The notes: generated by a model not told the origin, from the sequence alone. Positions 5,163 through 60,463 are shown, counted from the first letter of the stretch. The stretch is 64,000 nt of DNA from Saccostrea echinata (GCF_033153115.1 NW_026889833.1:806001-870000), one strand, 5' to 3'. Translations and numbers: made by a program.

Positions 5163-6431
5163 TTAAGGAAGCAGAGGACTAATTATATACTGAAACGCAA
5201 AAGAAACGCAACAAGCAGTAATCTACAAATATTTGAACCTTTTAACTAATGATTTTCATAACTGATTACAGTTAAGTTAAACTCGATTTAAAACCATCAA
5301 AGATTTGTTAACAATGTTAAATGATTACCTTTTAACTTTAGAAAGTAACACATGACTGTTAAAAACCCCCCTTCTCAGCCATTCAATTATGGCGTGGAAG
5401 ACTGCCATGCACAACAATTGCAGCTTGATTTCCACGATGCAATAAGTTCATCAATCTCGGGATCTGAGCGAAAAAAATATTCTTTGCCATTTTTAAATGT
5501 CCGTTTTTCAGATGATGAAGTCGAATTTTCTCTAACCTAGCGCAGTGTAGTAACACTTGGACTTCCGGTCCACGGACTATCATTCATGCTAATGATACGT
5601 ATGAGCCTGTTGAGGCGTGTTGTCGTGCATTTTTGCATCTGCAATTCTCCATTACCTTTATTTTCAGATTTTCCAAGTAGAGCACTTGAAATGCGTACTT
5701 AAGTCATTTTCAGGAAGCCTCGGCATATCTTCCAGAAACGAAAGGAGAATTTATTTTGCGAAATATTGCTGCATTACTTATGATAAACAGATACAAACCC
5801 TTAAAACCCCACATTTTTGTCAAATGTTTTGTTAAACATGCAATTTTTGATTTCTGTTCAGCGGGCTCAAACTTAACGTCCGGTTATGACATGAAAATCA
5901 TTCAACCGTTAAATTATCGATACTTACAATGTTGAAGATATCCGTACTTTTTAGATACAAAATTATATCCTTTATATGATTTTCCCCTCTAAAATAGGAT
6001 GTTGCGTTTCTTTTGCGTTTCAGTATACTTGGACCGCCTACAGTGCCAAATATACCACCTACACCGCCAACTAGGCTGAGTGAACCTCCTTTATCGCCGC
6101 GGTAAACTTGAAAAGGGCTGATTGAATGGTAAGTACGCATGTCAATTTGGCCATGCAGATGGTCTTCTTCAGCATTTTCCATTATATAGGGACAGAAGTT
6201 TTCGTCATTTCATGGTATTTGTGTTGAATGGAAAGGGAGGTCGGTGAAGTTACTGTTATAGTAATCAAGTCGTTGATATTCAATTGGAATCTGATACCTT
6301 TCCAGCTGTAGTCATAATTTGGACAATATTTCTGTGGAAACTGTCGTCTGCTTATTACTTATCACTGCAGGGAGGTCCAATTTGTTGACTGTCTATTTCA
6401 TTAGAATTGGTGCAAGTCCCGTATTTTACCT
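5163..6431 (-). pseudogene. Decayed terminal exon of an unknown protein with a Gly-rich C-terminus, disrupted by the Tc1 insertion
   Basis: One frame runs from ~6390 to 6026 with two in-frame TGA (6314-6312, 6212-6210). Removing the Tc1 element and one TA gives ...GGSLSLVGGVGGIFGTVGGPSIISPLLP* (TAA 5165-5163). Candidate acceptor ttttttgtag at ~6432. Confidence 0.4.
5188..6025 (-). mobile_element. Tc1/mariner element, internally deleted
   Basis: Perfect 26-bp TIRs TACTGAAACGCAAAAGAAACGCAACA (5188-5213 and inverse 6000-6025) and TA TSDs (5186-87, 6026-27). Minus strand retains a decayed Tc1 N-terminus (MPRLPEND...; DSPWTGSPSVTT...IRLHHLKN, compare DRPRSGRPRVTT...IRL.HLRN). Confidence 0.85.
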
Positions 6432-6616
6432 CTACAAAAAAGAGTATATTGCTGCTTATAACAGATCAGGACTTTGAAATGATTTATACAATACATATTT
6501 GAATGGATTTCTTTGAATCAAATATTTTGGCCAGTTTCTCTATGTTAATGTTGAGAGATCCTTCAATTGGTGCAACAGATCTGCAGGGTTTTTGATAATA
6601 AAGTATTCTAAAGCTT

Positions 6617-6886
6617 AATCCTTCTCCGAGCAATGAGGCCCATGAGGCCGTTGCTTCTATCCGGTTTCATTGGTGCTAAGCAGATTCCCCTTGATGGGAT
6701 ACCAGTCAACTCCCAGTAAACCCCCAGCCTTAACCGGTTCCCATTTCAGTTTTGGTGGATCAAGACAATGCAGATAAAGTACGTTGTCTAAGGACACAAT
6801 ACACAATATCATGTGATCACAGCGGGGTCGAAAACGGCGACCTTTCGTTTAATGGCCTAATACCTATAACCACTGACACATGTGCT
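6617..6886 (-). mobile_element. tRNA-derived SINE (CORE/V-type body)
   Basis: Minus strand has an A-box-like cagtggtta, B-box-like gttttcgaccc, then tgtgtccttagacaacgtacttt (CORE-like), gactggtatcccatcaagggg (V-like) and a gaaaccggatagaagc tail. Confidence 0.6.
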
Positions 6887-7270
6887 CTTCTAAGGTAGTC
6901 TTTGTAGATATTATATTTCTGTTTGTTAAAAAAAATCAATGTTCTTAATGTGCTTGTTTTCAGTAACTTTCATAGTATGTCCCTTTACTAACATTCCATG
7001 AATAACACTTTTTTCCAGATATGCTATGTCTAAATTTCTTTTTTGAAATTCCAACTCTATATTTCCAGTGTAGAACTTGTAACCTAAGTATCGATCGCGA
7101 GTTACACAGCGTTAACCTCATTGATACTTGATCTGGTTTCTTTTCAAAATATAAAAACCAAAATAAAAAAGTTCAATTGAGAATTATAAATTCACAGATA
7201 AATACTTGAAATGACAAAATGACCACCTGAGTTGAATACTTCGTCTTGTGACCTCTACCCAGTGATCCTT

Positions 7271-7597
7271 CTACTTCACCAGACTATCGTCCTCCTCTCG
7301 TCCAAGTCTTTCTCCTCCATACCATCCATATCCTCCAATTATTCCTTCTGTATTTCCTCTGAATCCTCGTCCTCCTGTATATCCTCTATATCCTCCAATT
7401 ATTCCTCCTGTATATCCTCCCAATCCTCCGAATCCAAATGCCGGGCTTCCGTATCCAACTACTCCTCCAAATCTTGCTGATCTAAGGCTTTCAGCCATTC
7501 GTCCACCAAGCCCCCAAGGATCAAAGCTTTGATAATCGATTTCAGTGTCCGCAAAACAGGAGAACAGAATGGCGAGTAACACAATCAAGGCTTTCAT
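7271..7597 (-). CDS. Secreted Gly/Tyr-rich low-complexity protein (shematrin-like shell-matrix candidate), 108 aa
   Basis: ATG at 7597. Signal peptide MKALIVLLAILFSCFA followed by GGY/GGIIGGY repeats. Acceptor ttaacag lies 5 nt upstream of the ATG. Confidence 0.75.
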   Translation of the reverse strand: MKALIVLLAILFSCFADTEIDYQSFDPWGLGGRMAESLRSARFGGVVGYGSPAFGFGGLGGYTGGIIGGYRGYTGGRGFRGNTEGIIGGYGWYGGERLGREEDDSLVK

Positions 7598-7896
7598 GCT
7601 GACTGTTAACACATTATTTTTGTTATCTTTTATTTTATTTTTATGTTAACTTAATTATTTTTCATATAAAACTGTTGTATTTATTAAAAGAAATGCTCTG
7701 CTATTCATACTTATTCGTTTCTAAGTTACAATGCAGCACCTCTGCCATTCAGAGCAAATTTCAAACTCTGTTAGGGATTGATCAAAAGTGCAATGTCCAA
7801 AACAAATTTCAAATAGTTTTCATCAAGACACCCCTCTCCTCCTCTCTCAAAATTAAAAATGAAGAATGCTGATGGAATTCAATTATTAAACAAATA

Positions 7897-8068
7897 CAGT
7901 GAAACACGGTTATAGCAAACACGCTTATTACGAATTGATGCTTACAGCGAAGTGATATCCATCCCCTTGACTTTATAATATATTGTAAACTTGACGGATA
8001 TAACGAATTACGCTTATAACGAAACAAAATAGTCCGTCCCTGGCACATCGTTATAAGCGTTCTTACTG
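7897..8068. mobile_element. Tc1/mariner (pogo-like) MITE, 172 bp, in the intron of the Gly-rich gene
   Basis: TA|CAGTGAAACACGGTTATAGC ... GTTATAAGCGTTCTTACTG|TA: imperfect TIRs with TA TSD. Confidence 0.75.
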
Positions 8069-8627
8069 TAAATATTTATACTATTGAAAAGATCTTCACA
8101 ACTTGAGCGGTCCTGGTGCTACTCTTTGCAAAGCCCCGAAAAGAAACGGGAACACTGACGTGTCTGATGTTCAAAAGGCACTTTTACTTCTAACTATTTG
8201 AATTTAGGTTGGTTGGTTTTTTTTTTTTTTTTATTTGTTAATCCGAAATTGATGTTTTGATCTGGCCCCATAAAATTTAATCTGATATGAAAAGGTTTTA
8301 GGAAACATGAATAAAAATATAAAACTAATTTGAGTGCTTCTACATACATGAATGTGATCTATGATTAAGTCTTCTGAATTTGATATTTTTGTAACAATAA
8401 ACACGATTATCGTGTTTTTGTTAATCATAAATTTACTACTCTCTTGATAATTTCTCTACAACTTTGGTCATAACTGTAATTCAGAATCTAAAATAATTCT
8501 ACGAAGGAAATTAAAGTAATATACTAAAAAGCATCACAAAGAACATAAATAAATGACTTACAAGCATTTTTTCCTGGTCATTTCAACTGCGTTTTCCCCC
8601 TACCTTTATAATTTTACTTTCACTTAC

Positions 8628-8689
8628 CTGCAATCTGATTCTGTAAAGTATCAAAAATGTTAACTAAGAAATATATGTCGTCTTTTATA
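8628..8689 (-). promoter_or_regulatory. TATA box and short non-coding first exon of the Gly-rich gene
   Basis: TATAAAA at 8689-8683, a CA initiator-like site ~31 nt downstream (8659-8658), and a consensus donor CAG|GTAAGT at 8628/8627 that can splice to the acceptor at 7603. Confidence 0.55.
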
Positions 8690-9756
8690 GTTTACTGGGA
8701 CAGTAAGGGGTCATACACTCTAATCCAAATTTGCTTGCGGGAAATTTTAATTGGTCTGCAATCCTTAATTACTTATCATTTTGCTTAATGTTGATAGGGG
8801 TTGTTATATAATATTCAAATTCAATCATGAATTTACTAGAAATGCATACTTTTTTGCTTTAAAAATCATAATTGCATTATAACTATTGTCAAATCCAGTG
8901 AAAGTTGGTCACCTGAAATATCAATCATCTTGACAGTGGCTGACAGAATCAAATAAAAAAAAAAACTATTTCTTTTTCATGACAAAGACTTAATCAAAAT
9001 TTTAAAAATGGTGCTTTCTTAGAAAAACTGAACATTTTTTTCAAAAGCTGTATGACATGAACAATTCCTCATATTTACATTTAAAGATTAATTTCAGGTC
9101 TTACATACAAAGAAAGGGCAAGTTATGGTAACGGCCGAATCTGGCCCGTTATTTGATGTAAAAATCAGAACACAGTTAAAATTGTGATAGTTTGTAGTTA
9201 AGAACTTAAAATGATGCTTGTTTTAAAACCAGCAACAATTTTGATTCAAATCCTACACAGAGGCCACAAGAGGGTGCAGAGGTAGGATATTCTCCCGAAT
9301 TTCCTCAATTCTGGTCGAATTTCGTAAAATTTGAGACACTTTTCATTTCAAGAAACATAGTGCACAAGATTGCCTATCTGAAATTTTTATACATAAGATG
9401 CATTTGATACTAGTGTATGAAATATATAAATTTGATGGATAGGCAAGCTTGTGCTCTATGTTTTCTGAACTAAATGTGCTGTAAAATCGATGAAAGTTTG
9501 CATTAAAATGTGAAAATTCGGATATTGACATATTTTCCTTCCTGTGACGTGTGTGCATCCCATAGCTTAGAACCGATACTCATTTTGTGGCAGGGGTGAC
9601 AACAGGTTTTGAATTGATAAACTATTGCATCGTCCTAAACGGCACCCCAAACCAGGGCCCAAAAAGTGGTATTAGTCTATCTTGTCCTTTCAACTTTAAA
9701 AAATGCATTTTTTTAAAAAATGAAATAACATACCGATTGTCAAACTCAGTGATTAA

Positions 9757-9857
9757 TTGATTGTTTGTTCTTTAACGTCCCATTCGAGAATTTTTCATTA
9801 ACATAGAGACGTCCTCGTATGCAAGTGAAGGGCTTTAAATAAAGACCTATACTCGGT
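9757..9857 (-). mobile_element. 3' tail of a Meta-type tRNA SINE
   Basis: Reverse complement reads gacgtctctatgttaatgaaaaattctcgaatgggacgttaaagaacaaacaatcaa, similar to the tail of the full copy at 27651-28010. Confidence 0.55.
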
Positions 9858-10329
9858 AAAATTGTGAAATTCATGGCCCCTTTGTCCGGAGTTTTGGTGT
9901 TATGGTGGGGCTTCTTTGATCATAAAGTAAAAATGCAATGATTCTTTAAAAAAAAAATTCGTTGCTCCTGAATGTTTAGCAGACAAAATAAGTGCACGCT
10001 TATGATGAGCAAGGGTGTCTCTTTCCAAATCATAAAATTCAGGGATCTTGGATCAGGATTTTTGGTGTTAGGGTGGGGCTCTCTTGTTCTTATATGGAAA
10101 TGCATTAATTCTATGAATATCTTCTTACAGGTAAGTATATAGATCTAATATACTTTATGAGTTGTTACTAAGTACCAGACTAACCATTTGTTGAACCATT
10201 ATTTTCCTATTTCTCTTGTTTTTGGCAACATATCTCCATCTATTAGATTATTCTACTTTATAATAATCTGTGGATCATTTACAGGGTTGTATTATACTCA
10301 GGTAACCATTAAGGCCCTTGTGCCTTGTT
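9858..10329. repeat. Helitron/Helentron-associated ~166-bp satellite-type element fragment
   Basis: Two degenerate units (aaaattgtgaaattcatggcccct...ggtggggc) and terminal actcaggtaaccattaaggcccttgtgccttgtt. Same family as 34374-35330. Confidence 0.55.
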
Positions 10330-50900: not shown

Positions 50901-51339
50901 TCCTTTAAAGGATAAAAGGTCTTTCAGCATAGGCACTTGCCAAGAATTGAAATTATAGTCGTAATCGCAGTCTGTATCTAATGACGTAGTGTTTCTTGCT
51001 AAAAATTAAAGTGGAGAATTGAGAGCTCAAAAGCTATTTTTTACTTTCCTTTCTGCACCCAATAATCAATGTAAAATGATATACCATTGGTTGCTTTGTA
51101 AAATGCAAGTTAGTCACATGATAACCATACCTACCAAAAGTAGCTATCTGTGATCTACGGGAGGTAATCCAATAAGAGTAATAAAAAATATTACCGTAAG
51201 GAAGAATAACTCTGTATCTATAGTCTGTTTCTCTATTTCCACGATGCAATATCACAACATACTTGCTCAAAGTTGATGTCATAATTGTAGTTCTGGAATT
51301 GATTGAATATCCTGATGTTAAAAGACTTGGAACAATTTA

Positions 51340-53050
51340 TATTAAAGTTATAATTCACTGTAATATGGAGAAAAAAAACCACTCTGTCTGATTCTGTCCA
51401 CAAATTCACAGACAGTCCATATTATGTCACTCAATGTATGTAACATTAAAATTTTAAAAAAAGTAAAAACAAAAGTGATGGAAATTCCAGATAGTCCATA
51501 AATGGAAAAGATCGAATCCACGTCCATGCATATGTGGTGATGATTCCATAACAATACGGTTATATCCCCATTATCCAAGTTCAATATCACAAATTTATTG
51601 CTGCAGTGAAACTTCAGACATATTCCAGATGATTAAGAAGATTTATTGAAAACTGTTTGTTCGCAAGAGGCTGGTATGTTGCTTTTTTATGAAGAGCTGG
51701 TACAAATAATATTAAAGTTCACACAAACATCAAGATTCAGTGTGGTGCGGAAAAACCTGCGGTTACTTATTCTGTCCATAATTTTACTTCAAGACAGTCC
51801 AAATATAATGTCACCTGGGTTGTGATATTGAAAAATGTAAAGATAAAAAGATCATGGGAATTTTAACAAGTCAGTTGATGGTAAACATCCAAAATCCATG
51901 TCTGTATCCAGTGGTAATGATTTCATAGCATTTCATGAAGAAATTTGTAAATCTCCATTATCCAAGTTGAATAACATAATTTTATCCTGCAGTGAAACAT
52001 CATATATATTTCAGAGATATATTATTTAAGTGATAAAAATTGTATTTCAAGGGAGCAGAGGCAACTTTATAAATTAAAATAAAGAAGAAAATGATAGAAG
52101 AAATATTTAAATTCATGGAAATATTTTAAAGATTTCAGTATAGTGTGGAAAAACCCACGCTGACTGAATGTTCACTAGGATGTTCAAATATGTATATCTC
52201 TACCTGGTAAGAAGTACATGATAATATTATTATTTCATGGTATTTTGATTAGAAATACATGTAAATGCCTTCAATAGTTCTAAGCATTACAAATTTATTC
52301 CTGCAGTGAAAAATCATATGTTTTATAGATAATTATTAAGAGTTTAAAAACTGCATTCTAATTGGGAGCCGAGCTAGGTTTATGAAATATGAAGATGAGG
52401 AGAACTGGTATAAGAAATATTAAAGTTATTGCAAATATTAAATATCAGTGTAGTGTGGAAAAAGCCACGCTTACTGAATCTTTACTAAGGCAGTCCAAAA
52501 TCAAATTGTTATGTAATAGTAAAAATGTAAGAATGAAATTATGGAAATATGAAGAAGTTGGCCATTGGTTTGAAAGAGCAAAAATGTATGTCATTGTCCA
52601 GTAAGAATTAATTACTACTTAAAAAAATCATGTATATGTAAGTCCCTTCATCAGTGCTGAATATTAGAAATCCATTACTGCAGTGCAACATCACATAAGT
52701 TTCAGATAATAACTGTATTTCATGGGAGGTAAGTTTGTATGTTGTTTTTGGTGAAGAAAGTAAGATAAAACATATGTTAAAGTTGATGCAAACATGAAGA
52801 TTCAGTATAGTGCGGAAAAACCCGCGCTGACTGATTGTGCCTACAACAACTTTACTATTATAGAAAGGCAGTCCTAATACAATGTCATTAGATATATAAC
52901 GTAAAAAAAATGTTAATAAGTTTTGCAAATTTGAAAAAGTCAGTTGATGGGAAAGTGCCTGAAAACCCATCATTTCCTTTATATGTAAAAAGCGTGCTCT
53001 AATGATTAAAAATATAAATCCTGCAGATTAAAAAAATATTCCTACTTGTA
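51340..53050. repeat. Degenerate tandem repeat, ~310-390-bp unit, ~5 copies
   Basis: ctgcagtgaaa-type anchors at ~51602, 51987, 52301, 52679, 53021 and tcagtrtrgtgyggaaaaa anchors at ~51737, 52135, 52445, 52802. Confidence 0.7.
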
Positions 53051-53482
53051 AAAGTTTTGCAAGATATTATGTGATATTGTTGATATAAAAGGCAACTGGC
53101 TGATGCTAAAAAAGGATAAAAATTTTGAAAAAATGGAGAAGTGCTGAAAAACTATTCAGTTAACTGTATAAATTTAGACATTTAAGTGAAGTGCCAAACC
53201 TTGTCCCTGTCATGCTCATTCTCATGAGAAATCGATGTTAGTTATTTAATTAATTTTGAAAGACATTTATGATTTTTTTTTTAAAGATTTGCTTTTCGGT
53301 CATAGTCTGAACCAATCCGGCTTCCGTGGCGGTACCAGGGATTAAAATCCCCGCCGGCACAGCTCCAGGCTAATGACTTACTTTGCAAATGACATATAAA
53401 AAAAAATAATCATATTATAATTCTTTCTAGAGTACAAGAGGAAACTTCTTGTTTAGTAACTTAAAATGAATAATAGGGTATA

Positions 53483-53995
53483 TCAAGGAAAAAACTTCAG
53501 GTTAACAAAGTTCTGGTTTTTTTATAACAAGCACAATGGGTAAAATTCCTTCCAAACATCAAGGAGAGTGAAACTTCAGGTACACAAAGTTTTTTATAAC
53601 AAGCACAATGGGTAAAATTCCTTCCAAACATCAAGGAGAGTCATACTTCAGGTACACAAAGTTTTTTATAACAAGCACAATGGGTAAAATTCCTTCCAAA
53701 CATCAAGGAGATTGAAACTTCAGGTACACAAAGTTTTTTTATAACAAGCACAATGGGTAAAATTCCTTCCAAACATCAAGGAGAGTGAAACTTCAGGTAC
53801 ACAAAGTTTTTTATAACAAGCACGATGGGTAAAATTCCTTCCAAACATCAAGGAGATTGAAACTTCAGGTACACATAGTTTTTTATAACAAGCACAATGG
53901 GTAAAATTCCTTCCAAACATCAAGAAGAGTGATACTTCAGGTTAACAAAGTTCTTTATAACAAGCACAATGGGAAGTGTTCCTTCCAAACATCAT
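53483..53995. repeat. 72-bp minisatellite, 7 near-identical copies
   Basis: Unit aaacttcaggtacacaaagtttttttataacaagcacaatgggtaaaattccttccaaacatcaaggagagtg, starting at ~53492, 53571, 53643, 53715, 53788, 53860, 53932. Confidence 0.95.
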
Positions 53996-55063
53996 GGATT
54001 ATAGTTTTGATATCGTTCATTAAGCATTAAAAAGTCGTACATTTTTGGTAAACAGTATTATAAAAATTATGTAAAAACTGGCTCAATTACATAACTCTGA
54101 TGCAAAAAGATTAAAAATAATTGTTGCTTTTTAAATATATTTGAATTGTGAATATTGGGGAAACTTTTTTTTTACATTAGAAGTACAGATACATGAGGAG
54201 GAGTTATTGCCCTTACCAACATTTTTTAAAGATTAATTAATTAATTATTTAAAGAAAATATTCAGTTTTTCAATCTTTTACTGAATAATATTTTTCAGTA
54301 TATATATTGAAAAACATTCTTTTAAAGGATATATTTCTATTTGGTATGAATTTAAATCAATAACAGTTTTTTTCAAAACCCTATGACATCAAAGATGTGG
54401 AAATACTGAAAATATTAACCTGAAATCTATGTCCCTTTAAATAAAGGATGTATGTCTGGTTAGGCACTTTCAAACTCAGGGTGTTCAAAACAAATCTGAT
54501 ACCATTACAAAATAATGATTAAGTGTCTTGCATAAATTAATAAAAACCCTTTATTTATGTAAAGTACTAGTATTAATGGTGGGCCAAAATATATAAGAAA
54601 TCATGATATGACAGAACTTTTTTTACATAAAGAACTTTATGGCGATGTACATTATTCAAGAAAATATAACCATTTAGGAGCCAACTCCATGAGGGGAAGG
54701 TTGTGTCATCCAGTTGATTTGTATGTTTCAATGAAATACAAGTATGTCTCATGCGAGTGTAAATTTACCTAAAAAAGGCACAAATAAACCTTCAGATTAT
54801 TACAATGCATGGTTACAAAGCTTTAGAAAAGTATCTCAGAATATAGTATGAACAAAATGAATTCATTTTTTAATTAGAAACTTTAAAATGCATTTCCTTT
54901 TAATAATTTTGAGATTTGATCATTTTCTCTATATAATATGGTTATAACTATAATTAAAATTAAAATTCCTGCCATCACAGCTCCAGACTAATGACCTACT
55001 TTGCAAATGGTAAAGATACATATCACAGAATGAAATGGGAAGTCATAAGTACACTACTTTATT

Positions 55064-55799
55064 TTAAATCCAACAGTCTCTTTTTGCTTGTTCAGATATT
55101 TTTTTCAACCAACATTTTGCTAATAAGGTGTCAGGATGAATACCATCTTTATAGAGTTTAAAATTATAGTATCTTTTTGTTTTCAATTTTCTGTTTTTTT
55201 CCACAACGGTATTTATCGGTAGCACTTAAATCTGAAGAAAACTGGGGGGAGTATACCTCGGTACTTTTATTCAATTCTCTAATTCTGTTATTTAAGGTGT
55301 AAATTTGTTGTTGTAATTTTTCATCATCAACTTCAAAAAGGGTGGGGTTTTTGTGTCCTTTGCATTTATTCCATTCTTTAATTGAATATATTGGAGTTTC
55401 TAAAAAAGTTACTTTACAGCCTGGAAAATTCTGCATAGTTTCTGTAATTTCTTTGGAGTTCATAATAATTTTATCTACTTCGTCATCATTATCAGATGTT
55501 AAAGAAATATACTGTTTGTTTTTTGAAGTTAAGTTACAAGTGCCTAACCAAACATACAACCATATGTTTCCATGACGTTTAACCTTTTCAGCTAAATTTC
55601 TTTTCAGCCACTCTGTGCTGTCCTCAATCTTTGCACCACTACGTGCCCACCATAAAATTTCTTTTTCTGTATTATTTAGAACAAACCTTTTCAGCCAGTT
55701 GCCTTTACTATCAGATAACACAACAGGTACATAGCTTTTCTGACCTGATGGTGGTTGTGTAGGTTTGGAAATAAATTTACGAAGCTTGTTTTCTGACAT
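55064..55799 (-). CDS. SGNH/GDSL hydrolase-fold protein with one frameshift near 55180
   Basis: Block I VVLSDSKG, block II RSGA, block III VWLGTCNL in ORF 55164-55799. Removing one A in gaaaacaaaaaga restores TKRYYNFKLYKDGIHPDTLLAKCWLKKI...CWI* with the block V DGIHP (DxxH) motif. Confidence 0.7.
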
Positions 55800-55822
55800 T
55801 ATGATACTAAATTGAAGAATAA

Positions 55823-58800
55823 CTAATTATTTTGTAAAGAGTAGCAATGATCCAGCACTGATGAAGGTTTGGAAGTTTCTGTGTCTGTGAAGTGTAGGTG
55901 TCCCTCTTTTATATCATGTAAAATTTCTTGTTCAGTAAGCTCAAAAGTGTCCTCCTCCTCTACCTCTTCTTGGCCTCTTTCCCAGTATTTTACCTGTAAG
56001 AAATGAAAAGTTCATTACATGAATGGCATATATTACCTAAAATTATACATAAGTATAGTAAGGCAGACTATGAAATAAGCTCCTCAGACCATTCAAACTT
56101 TGAGCCAGAGGTATACTTATAAAATACATGTACCACATAAAAGTGTTTATCTTGCTAATTGCAAAACTAAAATTGAAACTTAATATAATTAATGAATACA
56201 CATTGTTTTCATAAGCATAGAGAAGGATTAATGCAAACATGGTGTGCTCATAGAAAACACAGTGATTTAGTGAACAAAAATACAGGTTTAAAATTATGAA
56301 GACATACACTTCAGACAAATTTTGATAAGTTATGCACAATTAAGCATCATCTGGAAATAATGAGGTGAAAAAAGTTAATAATGTAATATATCATTCTATT
56401 AAGTAACCACCAAGCACCTTTTCTTTAGGAAAGTAGGAAGAAAAGGAGATTCAGTAACATATAGATGTTAAGATCCCCATACAATCAACACCATTTTTTA
56501 CAATATTGTTATATAACAGTATTAGATTAAAAGTACGAAATCATAATATAATTTATAAGTACTTTAAATATTCCATCCTTATAGGAAACAATCTTTCCTT
56601 CCCACAGAGTGTCCTGACCTTGGTCGGTCCAAAGGTGTTTGAAATATTTTCCTATTATTTCTAGAGGTTTTAATGGTGTATCCTTCACAGACTCAGAACT
56701 TCTTGATATAGTTTTTTCAATTAAAGTGAGGAAATTGTTTGTCAGAGTTTCTACGTCATGCATTTTTCTGTTTTTACTAAAATGAGTTAAATGTTTGTCT
56801 GAAGGAGGCAAAATGAATACAGTCTTTAATAAATTAATTTGTTCTTTCAAGGCTGACAATTTTTCTTTTTTTGAGGGAAGTTTTTCTAATTCATTCTGAA
56901 CACGATTCCTATCACTCCATAAGCCATGTGATTTGATTTTTTCAACTGCAGAATTAAGCTGTTTTTCTTTCTTTTGATTTTTTAAAAGTACAGATTTTTG
57001 CCTCTCCCTTATTTGTTCTAAGTGTTTTTTGAATAAATTTTGCTTTCGTTCTTTCACGACTTTTAAAACATTTGTATTTCTTTTCCTGGCTTTTGTAATT
57101 ATTTTACATTGTTCTGATTCAGATTTTGATTTCAACCATTCAGATGTTTTATTATTTTTAAACATGATAATGCTCTCCATTGTATTAATATTGTAAGTAG
57201 GAGCTTTTGCAATGTTAGAATCTAATTTTGACATAAGCCTTTCTACATTTATATTGTTTGGAGGACATGACTGGCTATTTAAAAGAACATCTTTGGGTGG
57301 GTCATAAAATTTACCCCCATTTAAAAAATCCTTAAAAAGCTGCTCACATTTTTCTTTTAAAACAACACAAAGACATTCTAAAACATGACAAGTTCCAACA
57401 TCATTTGCAGTTGGTAAAAAAAGATATGATGACACTTCATCATAAAGAGTTGGACCACAGAACAATCGTATTTTGTTGTGTAAAAGCAATTGAGGATTTT
57501 CAATACAGGTTTCAAGAAAATGAACAACTCTTCTATACACACTTCCCATTTCAATTGCAGAAGTAGAAACTTCTGCACAAGTCCAATAAGGTTGTGTAAA
57601 AAGTACATTTAGAATTCCTAGTGCACGTAAAATACATAAAATACTGTTATCTGCAAGAGCTGTACAAATGTAAGTATGAATATAATTTAAAGAACTCTTT
57701 GATTCTTTTAGGTATGTTAAAATATGTTCATGAAGATAAAATGTTCCTGCTGAATTGTAAAACAAAGTATTGAATCTGTTTCCCCTAAACTTCATAATTG
57801 GTACCCTTGAAATATTCAACTTGTCTTTCAAATATGTTGCAGCAAGTAAGGGGTCACCACATCCATCTTTGTGAAACAATTTCGAAACACAACGCAATAA
57901 ATACATGGTTGCACACTCATTATTATTTGTATCAAATTTTATTTTATGATCTTTTTCTAGTTTAGATATTTCTTTCAGGCAAACATCCGAAAATTGCAAA
58001 AGAGGATGCACAGAACATTTAAAAGAATTTATAGCACAGTCATGATTTGAATGGCACTTTTTTTCAACCTCCAAAATGTTATTCACTTTTTGCTCTGTAG
58101 CACTTCTATCTGTCATAAAATTACTCACATTTTTCATAATATTAAAATTGGGGTCTTCTGAGTCAGTACATGTATCATTAAAAATTTCTTTCAAACAACT
58201 AACATATGTTTCTGCTTTGCCATCTACAACCTCCCTCAACCCAGCTGTAAAAGTTTTTTCATTTGTGGAAACTTCCACTCCATAATAATGTTTTCCTTTC
58301 TTTGTTGTTGCATCTCTGTGAATTGTTAAATTATTTAAGTCTTTTACTTCCGAACAAATATGAGCACGACTAATAATACCTAGCTCACTACTTAATTTTG
58401 CAACAGTTGATGGATGTGGCAACTCCTCTACACAAACATCCACTAGACCTAACACTTCTTCAATAATGGGATTAATATGTTGAGAAGGAATATTTCTACT
58501 TCTAAATTCATATAAAATTTTTCTTAATTTGAAATGGTACGGATTGCCTCTACATTCAGTGTTTCTGAAATTTAATATTTTCTGATTTTCATTTTCTTCA
58601 TCATGTTCATAGACATTATCTTCCAGAGATGATTTTAAGTTTTCAATTTCTTCTCTTAAGGCATTTATATCCGTTTTTATCGTGTTACATTGGGTACCAA
58701 CAGTAGTAAAATTTTTATTTTGTTTATTTTTTTCTCTGGATGACACAGACTCTTTAAATTTTATACGGAGGCTGCTGATTGTGGCCTGTAATCTTTGAAT

Positions 58801-60463
58801 AGTGCGTTGATTTCTCTTTAACTTCTGATTCAGGACATGTACTTTGATATTTTTTAGCCTTTTTTTTACTTTTTTGTTTTCTTTTCGCAAATGCTCACAA
58901 TCAGCACAGGAATCGTGTTCAGTTTTTTGTCTTTTATTTTCTTTTTGTACACTGTCAACTTGTTTTTGTTTCATAGAAGGCAAAATGAATTCTAACTTTA
59001 ATTTTTCTAAATACTTGTCCTTATTTGGAAATTTCTTAAGTCTTTTAATTTCATTTAAAGTTCGTTTTGCTTTTGTAAATAAACTTATGGGATTTACAAG
59101 GTCCTTTTCTATTTGAAGCACTTTACAAATTTCTTCATGAAATGCTCTGGAATCTCCTTGCACCTTTTGAAAAATGTTCTGAATGTCAGAATTATTTATC
59201 ATGTTGGTGAGTTTCACAACTATAACGAAATATTTACCATATATGCTGTAAATGATAAGCATAAATTTCCATGTCTTAACGTATATATGCATGTATTTTT
59301 CTGTATTTAAAACAGAAGAAAATATTTTATACATGTATTGAGGCTTACAAAAAAGAAAATAAAGGTTTGTTTCCACTTATAGCACTGACCCTTATTTTTG
59401 TCTATAAAGCTACACAAACAAAAACATACTGGTCTACCTATCCTACTTTTTTCAAACTGAAAGCGGAATCAAATTTTTTATAGGCCTTATAACATACTCT
59501 ATTATATACCATGGGAAACTTACACGCTAAGATAAGGCAATAGCAGTGCAGATAACAGAGAATATTTTTCTTTCCAATGAAATTTGTGCACAAAACACAC
59601 ACACAAAATTAGGAAAAGGATAAGTACCTATTTTCTGCATATATGGTACTGGATTTGATTCTGGAATTATGTCTTCTCTACAAAAAATAAAACCAAAAAA
59701 AAAAAAAAAAAAAAATTAAACTGATGCATAAAGTTAAAATAATATTACTTTATTACGATACATCCAGTATATATTAACTTATCTTTATTAATTTCAATTA
59801 TTATAACTGTGATTGTTATACTGTAATCATCATCATAAATAGTGAAATAAATTATCATTACTATAAATATTTATTTATAAGTAAAAGAAAACATGTAAAT
59901 ACAAATATTATAATTATTAAAGAACTCTACATACCTTATGTGGGCTTACCCATGATGATATAATATAGAAACAAACTATAAACAGCTGATTGAAAAGGGA
60001 CGTAATTAAAAGAACAAAATACCGCTTCAATATATTTAAAAATGATTGACAAAAATTGCTTCATTTATATCACTTGTGATTTTTCATATATATTTTTTTC
60101 ATATTTCCCCATCTATTAATCAATGATAGAACTTGCAAGAAGCAGAAATACCTGTGCAAAAAAATATTTTTTTGTATTCTACATTTCAGTCATATGTTTT
60201 TAAATTCTATTTTCTTTCAAATTAATCAAGTAAGTAGCATAAACTTAATAAAATAATCAAACCAAATACCTATACATGTTTAATTTTACTTACCTACACA
60301 ATGTCACTTCCCAGGTAATGTCCTGCGTCGAGATATATCGAAAGACTGTGTGGCGCGTATCTGATTGCACGGACTCCACTCCACAAATCACAACTTCCGC
60401 TGATTTAGAGTTATCGTTCTTTGCCGCCCCCTAGCGTTCAGTAGAAATGCTAAATGACGCCAT
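55823..60463 (-). mobile_element. Spliced hAT-like (CxxH-type) DDE transposase gene with a C-terminal Spindlin/Tudor-like domain
   Basis: Phase-compatible exons 60463-60294 (one in-frame TAG at 60433-60431), 59677-59628, 59219-56563, 55993-55823. Motifs HRDATTK (D1), FMTDRSAT (D2), CSVH, GNRFN, NNINVERLMSKLD (E). C-terminus IIGKYFKHLW...WEGKIVSY..|VKYW...FELTEQEILHDIKEGHL. Confidence 0.8.

What the first reader, a model, noticed from the sequence alone, without database searches (positions are those of the whole stretch)
55064..60463. Transposase-Tudor fusion followed immediately by an SGNH hydrolase: an unusual two-gene DNA transposon cassette
Seen: a nearly intact four-exon gene with D...D..CxxH...GNRF...ER motifs. 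Its spliced C-terminus (56563 to 55993) builds a Spin/Ssty-like module (IIGKYFKHLW..WEGKI..VKYW..L..DIKEGHL). A same-strand SGNH-fold ORF starts only 23 nt after the stop (55823 to 55799), leaving no room for its own promoter. Established: CxxH-type DDE enzymes belong to the hAT/P/MuDR group, Spindlin Tudor domains read methylated histone H3, and SGNH domains occur as cargo in some retroelements and as the RNA-binding OSK domain. Inference: a large hAT-related element (possibly a divergent hATw/hATx-like group) whose transposase is chromatin-targeted and which expresses an accessory SGNH protein from a bicistronic transcript. I do not know of a functional description of this combination.
Basis: partly seen in the sequence, partly recalled or inferred. 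Interest (0 to 1): 0.8.

Follow-up and report, generated by a model that had tools for sequence, protein, structure and literature searches.

The report
Mobile hAT-like transposon with Tudor, esterase
A 9.5-kb cut-and-paste DNA transposon that moved recently in this bivalve genome encodes a very divergent hAT-type transposase ending in a Spindlin-type histone-reader module, followed 23 bases later by an SGNH esterase gene of the kind that retrotransposons carry in the same animals.

Summary
It is a 9,466-bp DNA transposon (window 50987-60452, genes on the minus strand). It has 10-bp terminal inverted repeats and a 7-bp target-site duplication. Five copies are 92-99.7% identical, and an empty site proves insertion.

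ORF1 has no Pfam hit. Its model aligns with the Hermes hAT transposase (Z 17.7) and keeps D, D, CxxH and E. The family profile ends in one Spin/Ssty Tudor-like repeat (E 3e-15 against Spindlins). A conserved intron splits this repeat here.

ORF2 starts 23 nt after the ORF1 stop. It is an SGNH hydrolase by fold (pLDDT 95, Z 18-19) with an invariant Ser/Asp/His triad. In the window copy it carries one extra A in an A-run.

Both genes are under purifying selection (dN/dS about 0.18). They are linked at 10 loci in two subfamilies, but not in 44%-identical paralogues or in contigs from other bivalves. There the same esterase ORF heads LINE, Gypsy and BEL/Pao elements.

Tudor-guided chromatin targeting and bicistronic expression remain inferences, because no RNA data were usable. 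The hATw/hATx label is not supported. I class it as a new variant of a known kind.

The parts
50980..50986 (.). Left copy of the 7-bp target-site duplication (AATGACG)
   Evidence: The same 7 bp lie at 60453-60459. Two uninterrupted copies of the host repeat have AATGACG once.
50987..50996 (.). Terminal inverted repeat at the gene-distal end (TAGTGTTTCT)
   Evidence: The homology breakpoint is the same in five copies. It matches the other end at 8 of 10 positions. The older copy on C46 has a perfect 10-bp TIR, TAGCATTTCT.
50997..55063 (-). Non-coding 3' tail of the element, including a 72-bp x 6.7 tandem array at 53518-53998
   Evidence: It is shared by all five young copies. It has no ORF of 130 aa or more and no retroelement ORF remnants. 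The array was found with TRF.
55064..55799 (-). ORF2: SGNH/GDSL-type esterase gene. It is 244 aa when intact; here one extra A near 55194-55200 shifts the frame.
   Evidence: Ser31, Asp218 and His221 are invariant and the GTC(N/D) block is conserved. The model has pLDDT 95.5 and matches GDSL lipases and PAF-AH at Z 16-19. dN/dS is 0.18.
55800..55822 (-). 23-nt spacer between the transposase stop and the esterase ATG
   Evidence: Shown. A 24-nt spacer is kept in the older subfamily. No AATAAA or ATTAAA lies between 56674 and 55382.
55823..55993 (-). Last coding exon of the transposase: second half of the Spin/Ssty Tudor-like repeat, a short tail and the TAG stop
   Evidence: The acceptor ...ttcttacag|GTAAAATAC is. 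The exon aligns with the C-terminus of homologue P0004 and with second exons of paralogues.
55994..56562 (-). Intron inside the Tudor-like repeat
   Evidence: The donor is AAA|GTACTT. The position is conserved in 44%-identical paralogues. An annotated spliced homologue joins the two halves.
56563..59202 (-). Main coding exon of the transposase (880 codons): N-terminal helical domain and coiled coil, catalytic core, C-terminal coiled coil, and the first half of the Tudor-like repeat (about 56563-56661)
   Evidence: Supported. dN/dS against the C46 subfamily is 0.19 overall and 0.07 for the Tudor part.
57133..58440 (-). Catalytic region: RNase H-like DDE core with an all-helical insertion domain (residues 256-691 of the translation of 56563-59205)
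   Evidence: VIA-align gives Z 17.7, rmsd 3.4 A and 338 residues against Hermes residues 135-609. Foldseek gives E 1e-8. D298, D366, C397, H400 and E655 are conserved.
59203..60442 (-). 5' untranslated and promoter region; predicted non-coding exon(s) with a consensus donor (AG|GTAAGT) near 60296
   Evidence: This is a sequence reading only. Positions 59951-60452 are conserved at 77-78% in the older subfamily, while 59331-59950 are not. No RNA evidence exists.
60443..60452 (.). Terminal inverted repeat at the gene-proximal end (reverse complement TAGCATTTCT)
60453..60459 (.). Right copy of the 7-bp target-site duplication (AATGACG)

Best explanation
This is an autonomous-type class II (cut-and-paste) transposon from a deeply divergent, Pfam-invisible branch of the hAT-like transposases.

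Shown:
- A 9,466-bp unit with 10-bp TIRs inserts with 7-bp target-site duplications and moved recently.
- It encodes a DDE/CxxH transposase with the Hermes-type architecture (an RNase H fold interrupted by a helical insertion domain).
- The transposase is flanked by coiled coils and ends in one Spin/Ssty Tudor-like repeat.
- A separate SGNH esterase gene follows 23 nt after the stop codon.
- Both genes are under purifying selection.

Inferred mechanism:
- The transposase excises and reinserts the element as hAT enzymes do.
- Its single Tudor-like repeat keeps three of the four aromatic positions that align with the methyl-lysine cage of Spindlin repeat 2. It tethers or activates the enzyme on methylated histone tails and so biases where the element lands. 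This would do in cis what the RAG2 PHD finger does for RAG1.
- The esterase was acquired once, in the ancestor of the two subfamilies. Its source was the pool of stand-alone SGNH ORFs that head LINE, Gypsy, BEL/Pao and (per earlier notes) YR retroelements in bivalves.
- It is made from the same transcription unit as the transposase, by termination-reinitiation or by an alternative 3' splice site just upstream of its ATG.
- It serves the element as an active accessory hydrolase, acting on lipids or membranes or as a deacetylase, as proposed for LINE ORF1 esterases.
For: Mobility:
- Five copies on different contigs are 92-99.7% identical and share breakpoints.
- Six independent 7-bp TSDs were read.
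- Two other copies of the host repeat show the empty site.

Transposase:
- D298, D366, C397xxH400 and E655 are conserved.
- Foldseek's top hits are Hermes at E 1e-8.
- VIA-align gives Z 17.7 over 338 residues, against about 10 for integrases.
- The Atlas model of homologue P0004 matches the DUF659, Dimer_Tnp_hAT and ZBED clusters.

Tudor:
- Family profile positions 857-918 match Spindlin-1/3/4 at E 3e-15, best with repeat 2.
- Four of 25 members hit PF02513 and two hit Agenet.
- The repeat is present in sponge and cnidarian homologues.
- dN/dS of the exon-1 part is 0.07.

Esterase:
- The S, G, N and H blocks and the Ser/Asp/His triad are invariant in 30 sequences.
- The model has pLDDT 95.5 and matches GDSL/SGNH structures at Z 18-19.
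- dN/dS is 0.18, with dS 0.62 against 0.70 for the transposase, which indicates co-divergence.

Linkage and spacing:
- Ten loci carry both genes in the same order and on the same strand.
- The stop-23/24 nt-ATG spacing is kept between subfamilies.
- No poly(A) hexamer lies between the ORFs, and one overlaps the esterase stop.

Retroelement origin pool.
Against: - No sequence method links the protein to hAT. There is no Pfam hit at E<=1. PF05699 finds 143 other places in this genome but none of these copies. hhalign against a canonical hAT ORF from the same genome gives probability 0.06.
- The TSD is 7 bp, not 8, and there is no BED finger.
- The window's own Tudor repeat could only be tested exon by exon. 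Exon 2 alone does not hit Spindlin.
- Histone binding, esterase activity and transposition have not been assayed.
- No RNA evidence supports any splice or a shared transcript. The one run found holds a 244-nt contig that may be DNA.
- The esterase is absent from 44%-identical paralogue lineages.
- It is also not next to the transposase in any contig from other organisms, including two with 57-61% identical esterases. It is therefore not required by the transposase family as a whole.
Confidence: 0.7

Rival explanations
1. The esterase gene is a captured passenger with no role in the element's own life cycle. It rides along, as genes do in Pack-MULEs or gene-carrying Helitrons.
For: It is missing from the 44%-identical paralogue lineages, which still keep intact transposase ORFs. 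It occurs independently in many retroelements. A Helitron that captured an SGNH hydrolase gene is on record (PMC4021074, listed).
Against: dN/dS is 0.18 over dS 0.62 between two subfamilies, and dS is similar to that of the transposase. The catalytic triad is invariant. Spacing to the transposase stop is conserved. Ten of 11 loci of this lineage keep it. A neutral passenger should have decayed at this divergence.
Confidence: 0.22
2. The element is not a hAT. It represents a separate superfamily-level lineage of the hAT/P/Kolobok/MuDR/Dada group that only shares the common fold.
For: No hAT profile detects it. It makes a 7-bp TSD. It has no BED finger, it has long coiled coils and a Tudor repeat, and it is only 14-17% identical to Hermes in structural alignments.
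Against: Hermes is by far the best structural match and the alignment covers the insertion domain and the C-terminal part (Z 17.7 against 9.5 for IS256-type ISCth4; P element Foldseek E 2.6e-3). Motif order and wording (D..TDxxA..CxxH..R-W/F-N..SER/VER) parallel a canonical hAT of this genome. hAT groups with 5-, 6- and 7-bp TSDs are already accepted (PMC12730594).
Confidence: 0.3
3. The esterase is expressed on its own, from a promoter in the last intron or exon or from an alternatively spliced mRNA. It is not translated from a bicistronic transposase mRNA.
For: A YAG preceded by a pyrimidine-rich run lies 4-7 nt upstream of the ATG in both subfamilies. A 569-bp intron lies 190 nt upstream. 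Eukaryotic reinitiation after an ORF of about 900 codons is normally inefficient (general knowledge).
Against: There is no direct evidence either way. No poly(A) hexamer separates the ORFs. One 244-nt contig spans the junction unspliced, but it may be DNA.
Confidence: 0.45
4. It is a host gene pair (a domesticated transposase plus a neighbouring hydrolase), not a mobile element.
For: The gene has introns, a CpG-containing 5' region and intact ORFs under purifying selection. RefSeq annotates homologues as ordinary proteins.
Against: There are TIRs, six different 7-bp TSDs, an empty site, at least 10 dispersed copies including broken ones, and insertion inside another repeat.
Confidence: 0.02

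Closest known systems
hAT superfamily transposases (Hermes, Ac, hobo; hAT5, hAT6 and hAT7 groups)
   Same: A DDE RNase H-like core interrupted by a large helical insertion domain. A CxxH motif follows the second D. There is an R-(W/F)-N motif and a C-terminal (S/V)ER motif. TIRs are short and begin with TAG. The gene contains introns. Non-8-bp TSD groups (5, 6 and 7 bp) are already recognised (PMC12730594).
   Different: Pfam hAT models and hhalign do not detect it. There is no BED zinc finger. It has long N- and C-terminal coiled coils, a C-terminal Tudor-like repeat and a 7-bp TSD in an animal. The published hAT7 group is fungal and clusters with Ac/Tam3.
Transposase or integrase fusions with chromatin readers (chromovirus integrase chromodomains; hAT-Chromo fusions in the sponge Ephydatia, bioRxiv 10.1101/2021.11.30.470311; RAG1 with the RAG2 PHD finger)
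   Same: A methyl-lysine reader module joined to, or working with, a DDE recombinase. It plausibly links DNA cleavage or integration to a chromatin state.
   Different: The fusion is old, being present in mollusc, sponge and cnidarian homologues. It escaped a Pfam-based survey because the transposase has no Pfam domain.
Esterase (SGNH/GDSL) ORFs of retroelements: CR1/L2/RTEX LINE ORF1 (ZfL2-1, PDB 4c1b, PMC3905857) and rotifer Vesta LTR and Athena elements (PMC5408684)
   Same: A catalytically intact SGNH hydrolase carried as an accessory gene and shared among unrelated element types. Relatives of this very ORF head LINE, Gypsy and BEL/Pao elements in bivalve contigs.
   Different: Here the carrier is a class II DNA transposon. 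The ORF lies downstream of the enzyme gene rather than in the gag-like 5' position. It is a stand-alone 244-aa protein without a coiled coil or PHD.
DNA transposons of many superfamilies that carry a TET/JBP dioxygenase gene in fungi (PMC12730594)
   Same: One accessory enzyme gene is passed among heterogeneous transposon lineages, including hAT with 7-bp TSDs. It is placed next to the transposase in the same orientation.
   Different: The enzyme (esterase), the host group (bivalves) and the donor pool (retrotransposons) all differ.
Dada superfamily (PMC3706591)
   Same: TSDs of 6-7 bp, large intron-containing elements of 4.7-11 kb, presence in oysters, and membership of the C/DxxH transposase group.
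   Different: Dada has DxxH, N-terminal CCCC and C-terminal CCHC zinc fingers, no TIRs, and strict insertion into snRNA or tRNA genes. None of these holds here.

Membership tests
hAT superfamily | RNase H-like DDE catalytic core interrupted by an all-alpha insertion domain, as in Hermes | tested here: met
   The model (pLDDT 82) aligns to Hermes residues 135-609 with Z 17.7, rmsd 3.4 A and 338 residues. Integrases match only the core at Z about 10.
hAT superfamily | Conserved D, D, E triad with a CxxH motif after the second D | tested here: met
   D298, D366, C397, H400 and E655 are invariant or at least 90% conserved in 25 homologues.
hAT superfamily | C-terminal hAT dimerisation domain (Pfam PF05699) recognisable by sequence | tested here: not met
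   There is no hit at E<=1. PF05699 finds 143 other sites in this genome but none of these copies. hhalign against a canonical hAT ORF gives probability 0.06. The structural alignment does reach the Hermes C-terminus.
hAT superfamily | N-terminal BED zinc finger | tested here: not met
   No Pfam hit and no conserved Cys or His in the N-terminal 250 residues. The model shows a helical bundle followed by a coiled coil.
hAT superfamily | 8-bp target-site duplication | tested here: not met
   Six insertions have 7-bp TSDs, one confirmed by an empty site. hAT5, hAT6 and hAT7 groups show the length can vary.
hAT superfamily | Short TIRs (10-25 bp) | tested here: met
   The older copy has a perfect 10-bp TIR, TAGCATTTCT. 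The young copies match at 8 of 10 positions.
hAT superfamily | Hairpin formation on flanking DNA during excision | not testable with these tools
   This needs biochemical assays or excision footprints.
Spin/Ssty (Spindlin-type Tudor-like repeat, PF02513) | Sequence match to the repeat profile or to solved Spindlins | tested here: met
   The family profile matches Spindlin-1/3/4 at E 3e-15. Four of 25 members hit PF02513. The window's own protein, tested exon by exon, does not reach significance alone. Its two halves align with the family.
Spin/Ssty (Spindlin-type Tudor-like repeat, PF02513) | Aromatic cage residues for methyl-lysine | tested here: inconclusive
   Aromatic residues stand at three family-wide conserved positions (H-x-W, W-x-G, V-x-Y). 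A fourth (F/Y-E-L) is conserved in bivalves only. Mapping to the Spindlin cage rests on my recollection of the residues. No structure of the joined repeat was made.
Spin/Ssty (Spindlin-type Tudor-like repeat, PF02513) | Three tandem repeats, as in Spindlin proteins | tested here: not met
   There is one repeat here and in most homologues. The Clytia homologue has a second one.
SGNH/GDSL hydrolases | Four blocks with catalytic Ser (block I), Gly (II), Asn (III) and Asp-x-x-His (V) | tested here: met
   xDS31KG, G55, G86-T-C-(N/D) and D218-G-I-H221 are invariant or nearly so in 30 sequences. In the window copy block V is out of frame because of one extra A.
SGNH/GDSL hydrolases | Flavodoxin-like SGNH fold | tested here: met
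   The model has pLDDT 95.5. Foldseek gives probability 1.00 to GDSL lipases and acylhydrolases. VIA-align gives Z 18-19, rmsd 2.5-3.0 A and about 183 residues. No Pfam or PDB sequence hit was found.
SGNH/GDSL hydrolases | Esterase activity | not testable with these tools
   This needs an enzyme assay.
Dada superfamily | DxxH motif, CCCC and CCHC zinc fingers, no TIRs, insertion into snRNA or tRNA genes (PMC3706591) | tested here: not met
   It has CxxH, no other invariant Cys, and 10-bp TIRs. The six target sites are unrelated, and one lies inside another repeat.

The most novel reading that the evidence does not exclude
A metazoan-wide, so far unclassified hAT-like transposase lineage uses a built-in Spindlin-type methyl-histone reader to choose or license its integration sites. 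One oyster branch of it has also taken over the retrotransposons' SGNH esterase as a co-expressed accessory factor that it needs. That would be the first case of this retroelement 'helper' enzyme working for a cut-and-paste DNA transposon, and it would imply a function that does not depend on an RNA intermediate.
Probability: 0.25. Interest if true: 0.72.

Novelty: new variant of a known kind. Interest (0 to 1): 0.55.

Why it matters
- Standard domain-based annotation misses a whole family of transposases. They have no Pfam hit and RefSeq calls relatives 'uncharacterized' or 'SPIN3-like'. This element gives the family a complete mobile reference with ends, TSDs and an empty site.
- A hairpin-type DDE transposase with a methyl-histone reader in the same chain is a natural parallel to RAG1 working with the RAG2 PHD finger. 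It offers a simple system for asking how chromatin reading steers DNA transposition.
- The esterases of LINE, LTR and YR retroelements have no settled function. Finding the same ORF under selection in a DNA transposon argues that the enzyme's role is not tied to RNP assembly or reverse transcription. That narrows the hypotheses and gives a tractable test.

Tried and rejected
- Pfam scans of both ORFs, and of 25 homologues, gave nothing for the transposase core or the esterase.
- A PDB sequence search with the esterase profile found nothing.
- Exon 2 of the Tudor repeat alone against the PDB gave nothing meaningful.
- hhalign of the family profile against one canonical hAT ORF from this genome showed no similarity. 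The template was a single partial sequence, so this is a weak test.
- The ESM Atlas does not hold the window protein. A homologue was used instead.
The genomic context of homologues in other bivalves could therefore not be read.
Smaller pieces were used instead.
- The RNA search gave one run with 5% of words. It is of uncertain type and holds two short contigs, so it is not informative about splicing or a shared transcript.
- I looked for LINE or LTR ORF remnants in the 3' tail, which would have shown that the esterase arrived with a retroelement fragment. There were none.
- Dada was considered because of the 6-7-bp TSD and rejected.
- hATx/hATw was rejected.
- The host-gene reading was rejected.
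- The joined (spliced) protein was deliberately not built, searched or folded. The two coding exons were analysed apart.
- The large representative-protein search was not used, because fold and profile results had already settled the protein's identity.

Full report
**What is there.** On the minus strand of window 55064-60463 lie a 949-codon open frame (56527..59376) and a 211-codon ORF (55164..55799).
- The real start of the first gene is the Met at 59202. Annotated homologues from Ostrea and Mizuhopecten begin at the aligned position, so there is no upstream coding exon.
- The open frame leaves the gene at a GT donor right after ...DGIFK (56563). The next exon starts at a pyrimidine-rich acceptor at 55993 and reads VKYWERGQ...DIKEGHLHF... 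up to a TAG at 55825-55823. The ATG of the second ORF follows 23 nt later, at 55799.
They were analysed apart.

**It is a mobile element, and larger than reported.**
They are 92-99.7% identical.
- Their homology to the window starts and stops at the same two bases, 50987 and 60452/3.
- Each copy has different flanks and a different 7-bp direct repeat: AATGACG, ATTAACA, AATAATG, CTCCGTG and ACAAAGG.
- An older copy on C46 (about 80% identical in coding DNA, about 11.9 kb) has the same ends, a perfect 10-bp inverted repeat TAGCATTTCT, and the 7-bp repeat ATTTACA.
- The window copy sits inside another high-copy repeat. Two other copies of that repeat read straight through the site with a single AATGACG. 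This is a clean filled-site versus empty-site comparison.
- The unit is therefore 9,466 bp (50987-60452). From one end it contains a TIR, a 5' region, the transposase gene, the esterase gene, a 4-kb non-coding tail with a 72-bp x 6.7 array, and a TIR.

**The first protein.**
- Pfam finds nothing.
- A word-based search found 42 relatives in bivalves, a sponge (Dysidea) and a hydrozoan (Clytia). Most are annotated 'uncharacterized' and one is 'SPIN3-like'.
- In an alignment of 25 sequences, D298, D366, C397, H400 and E655 are invariant or nearly so. Numbering follows the translation of 56563-59205.
- An AlphaFold2 model built on that alignment (pLDDT 82) has Hermes hAT transposase as its best PDB match. 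Foldseek gives E 1e-8. VIA-align gives Z 17.7, rmsd 3.4 A and 338 residues, with model 256-691 on Hermes 135-609.
- Retroviral integrases match only the RNase H core (Z about 10). ISCth4, the P element and Transib/RAG1 are weaker.
- The Atlas model of a 47%-identical homologue resembles the DUF659, Dimer_Tnp_hAT and ZBED clusters.
- By eye, the motif order parallels a canonical hAT ORF of this genome: DNAAN / CYAH / RRRWNS / PSERVFS against TDRSAT / CSVH / RGNRFN / NVERLMS.
- No sequence method makes the link, however. PF05699 finds 143 sites in this genome but none of these copies. hhalign of the family profile against that canonical ORF gives probability 0.06.
- There is no BED finger. The N-terminus is a confident helical bundle followed by a coiled coil, and a second long coiled coil follows the catalytic region.
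- I therefore call it hAT-like by fold and motifs, with membership in hAT proper left open. Dada, which also makes 6-7-bp TSDs and occurs in oysters, is excluded. It has DxxH, two zinc fingers, no TIRs and strict targets.

**The Tudor module.**
- The family profile's last 60 positions match Spindlin-1, -3 and -4 at E 3e-15. The match is best with repeat 2 and next best with repeat 1.
- Four of 25 members hit Pfam Spin/Ssty directly and two hit Agenet.
- The window's exon-1 tail (IIGKYFKHLWTDQGQDTLWEGKIVSYKDGIFK) aligns with the first half of the repeat and is modelled as two strands.
- Exon 2 aligns with the second half in the Ostrea homologue (E 2e-6) and in paralogues.
- The intron lies at the same point in paralogues only 44% identical.
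- Aromatic residues stand at three family-wide positions that align with Spindlin repeat 2. That these form the methyl-lysine cage is from my memory of the Spindlin1 structures, not tested here.
- The exon-1 half of the repeat is the most constrained part of the protein (dN/dS 0.07).
- Sponge and cnidarian homologues also have the repeat, so the fusion is old.

**The second protein.**
- The copy on C47 has an intact 244-codon ORF. The window differs from it by one extra A in an A-run near 55194-55200. This puts the C-terminal DGIHP block out of frame and may be an assembly error.
- Seventy relatives of about 245 aa were found in bivalves.
- In 30 of them, Ser31 (xDSKG), Gly55, G-T-C-N/D and Asp218-x-x-His221 are conserved.
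- The model has pLDDT 95.5. It matches GDSL lipases, PAF acetylhydrolase and sialate O-acetylesterases (Foldseek probability 1.00; Z 18-19).
- Sequence profiles (Pfam, PDB) do not see it.

**Linkage and selection.**
- In the window's genome the two genes lie in the same order and on the same strand at 10 loci. Five are young copies and five are older ones (65-77% protein identity). An eleventh locus is a truncated copy.
- Between the young and old subfamilies, dS is 0.70 for the transposase and 0.62 for the esterase. dN/dS is 0.19 and 0.18 respectively.
- The esterase was therefore already present in their common ancestor, and both genes have been kept functional.
- The stop-spacer-ATG arrangement is preserved, at 23 and 24 nt. 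The old subfamily has one more intron in the last exon, which the young one lost exactly.
- Paralogue lineages at about 44% identity keep the Tudor exons but have no esterase downstream.

**Where else the esterase lives.**
- One metagenome scan returned 25 loci with relatives (34-61% identity). None has the transposase.
- In these loci the ORF is the first gene of LINEs (followed by a PHD-containing ORF1 and an APE/RT ORF2), of Gypsy-type gag-pol units, and of a BEL/Pao gag.
- In the window's own genome, two paralogues (36-42% identity) sit directly upstream of gag-pol.
- Earlier first-reader notes on this genome list SGNH ORFs in Ngaro/YR retroelements as well (not checked here).
- In a tree, the Gypsy-linked and LINE-linked sequences form their own clades. 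The transposon's esterases fall in a supported clade (95/90) with sequences from Pinctada, Mytilus and metagenomes whose context is unknown.
- The element's tail holds no retroelement remnants.
- SGNH esterases shared among LINE, LTR and Penelope-like retroelements are known (PMC3905857, PMC5408684). I found no report of one in a cut-and-paste transposon. An analogous case is the TET/JBP gene spread among fungal DNA transposons, including hAT7 (PMC12730594).

**How it most likely works.**
- Shown: a recently mobile element with hAT-like ends and a DDE/CxxH enzyme of Hermes architecture; a conserved Spindlin-type repeat; and a conserved esterase with an intact triad, placed immediately downstream.
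- Inferred: the coiled coils oligomerise the transposase.
- Inferred: the Tudor repeat binds a methylated histone tail and biases or licenses integration. Reader-transposase fusions with Chromo and PHD domains are documented (bioRxiv 10.1101/2021.11.30.470311), and the RAG2 PHD finger is the classic parallel.
- Inferred: the esterase is made from the same transcription unit. No poly(A) hexamer separates the ORFs and one overlaps the esterase stop. A conserved YAG just upstream of the ATG leaves alternative splicing as likely as reinitiation.
- No RNA data could decide between these.

**Verdict.** The element is a new variant of known kinds: a hAT-like transposon, a reader-transposase fusion and a TE-borne SGNH esterase. 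Its value is mainly as a well-defined, apparently young reference element.

**Limits.**
- Repbase and Dfam are not available here.
- Linkage outside this genome is not shown.

Noticed in passing
window <=48000-50986 and 60460->=60943: The transposon is inserted in another, very young high-copy repeat of at least 3.5 kb, with at least 15 copies 99-100% identical across the genome. Its identity and left boundary were not determined. It contains a 157-aa ORF at 49799..50272 (-).
   Followed up: partly
loci L017/L004 (C46), L018 (C16), L019 (C54) against window 55823-55993: The older subfamily has an extra intron of about 125 bp in the last transposase exon. The young subfamily, including the window copy, lacks it exactly. 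This is a precise intron loss inside a DNA transposon.
   Followed up: partly
L030, L035, L040, L045, L033, L029 (LINE); L042, L044 (Gypsy-like); L049 (BEL/Pao); L052, L053 (own genome, gag-pol): Stand-alone SGNH ORFs of about 245 aa, related to the transposon's ORF2, are the 5'-most gene of several classes of retrotransposons in bivalve-type contigs and in this genome.
   Followed up: partly
window 55194-55200: The only difference from the C47 copy in the esterase ORF is one extra A in a homopolymer. The frameshift may be an assembly error rather than a real mutation.
   Followed up: partly
window 53518-53998: A tandem array of a 72-bp unit (6.7 copies, 93% matches) lies in the non-coding tail of the element. 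Copy number varies between element copies.
   Followed up: no
window 44535-46193 (-): An intact 552-aa ORF with B-box/TRIM-like cysteine patterns and an NHL-like C-terminal half. It is unrelated to the finding.
   Followed up: no
L009+L024 (C30:12601681-12612960), positions 6231-9977: A 1,249-aa LINE-type ORF (endonuclease-like N-terminus) lies 2.4 kb downstream of a 44%-identical transposase paralogue. It is probably an unrelated insertion.
   Followed up: no
protein P0036 (Clytia hemisphaerica homologue): This distant homologue carries a second Tudor-like repeat after the first and a long basic linker. The reader module therefore varies in copy number within the family.
   Followed up: no
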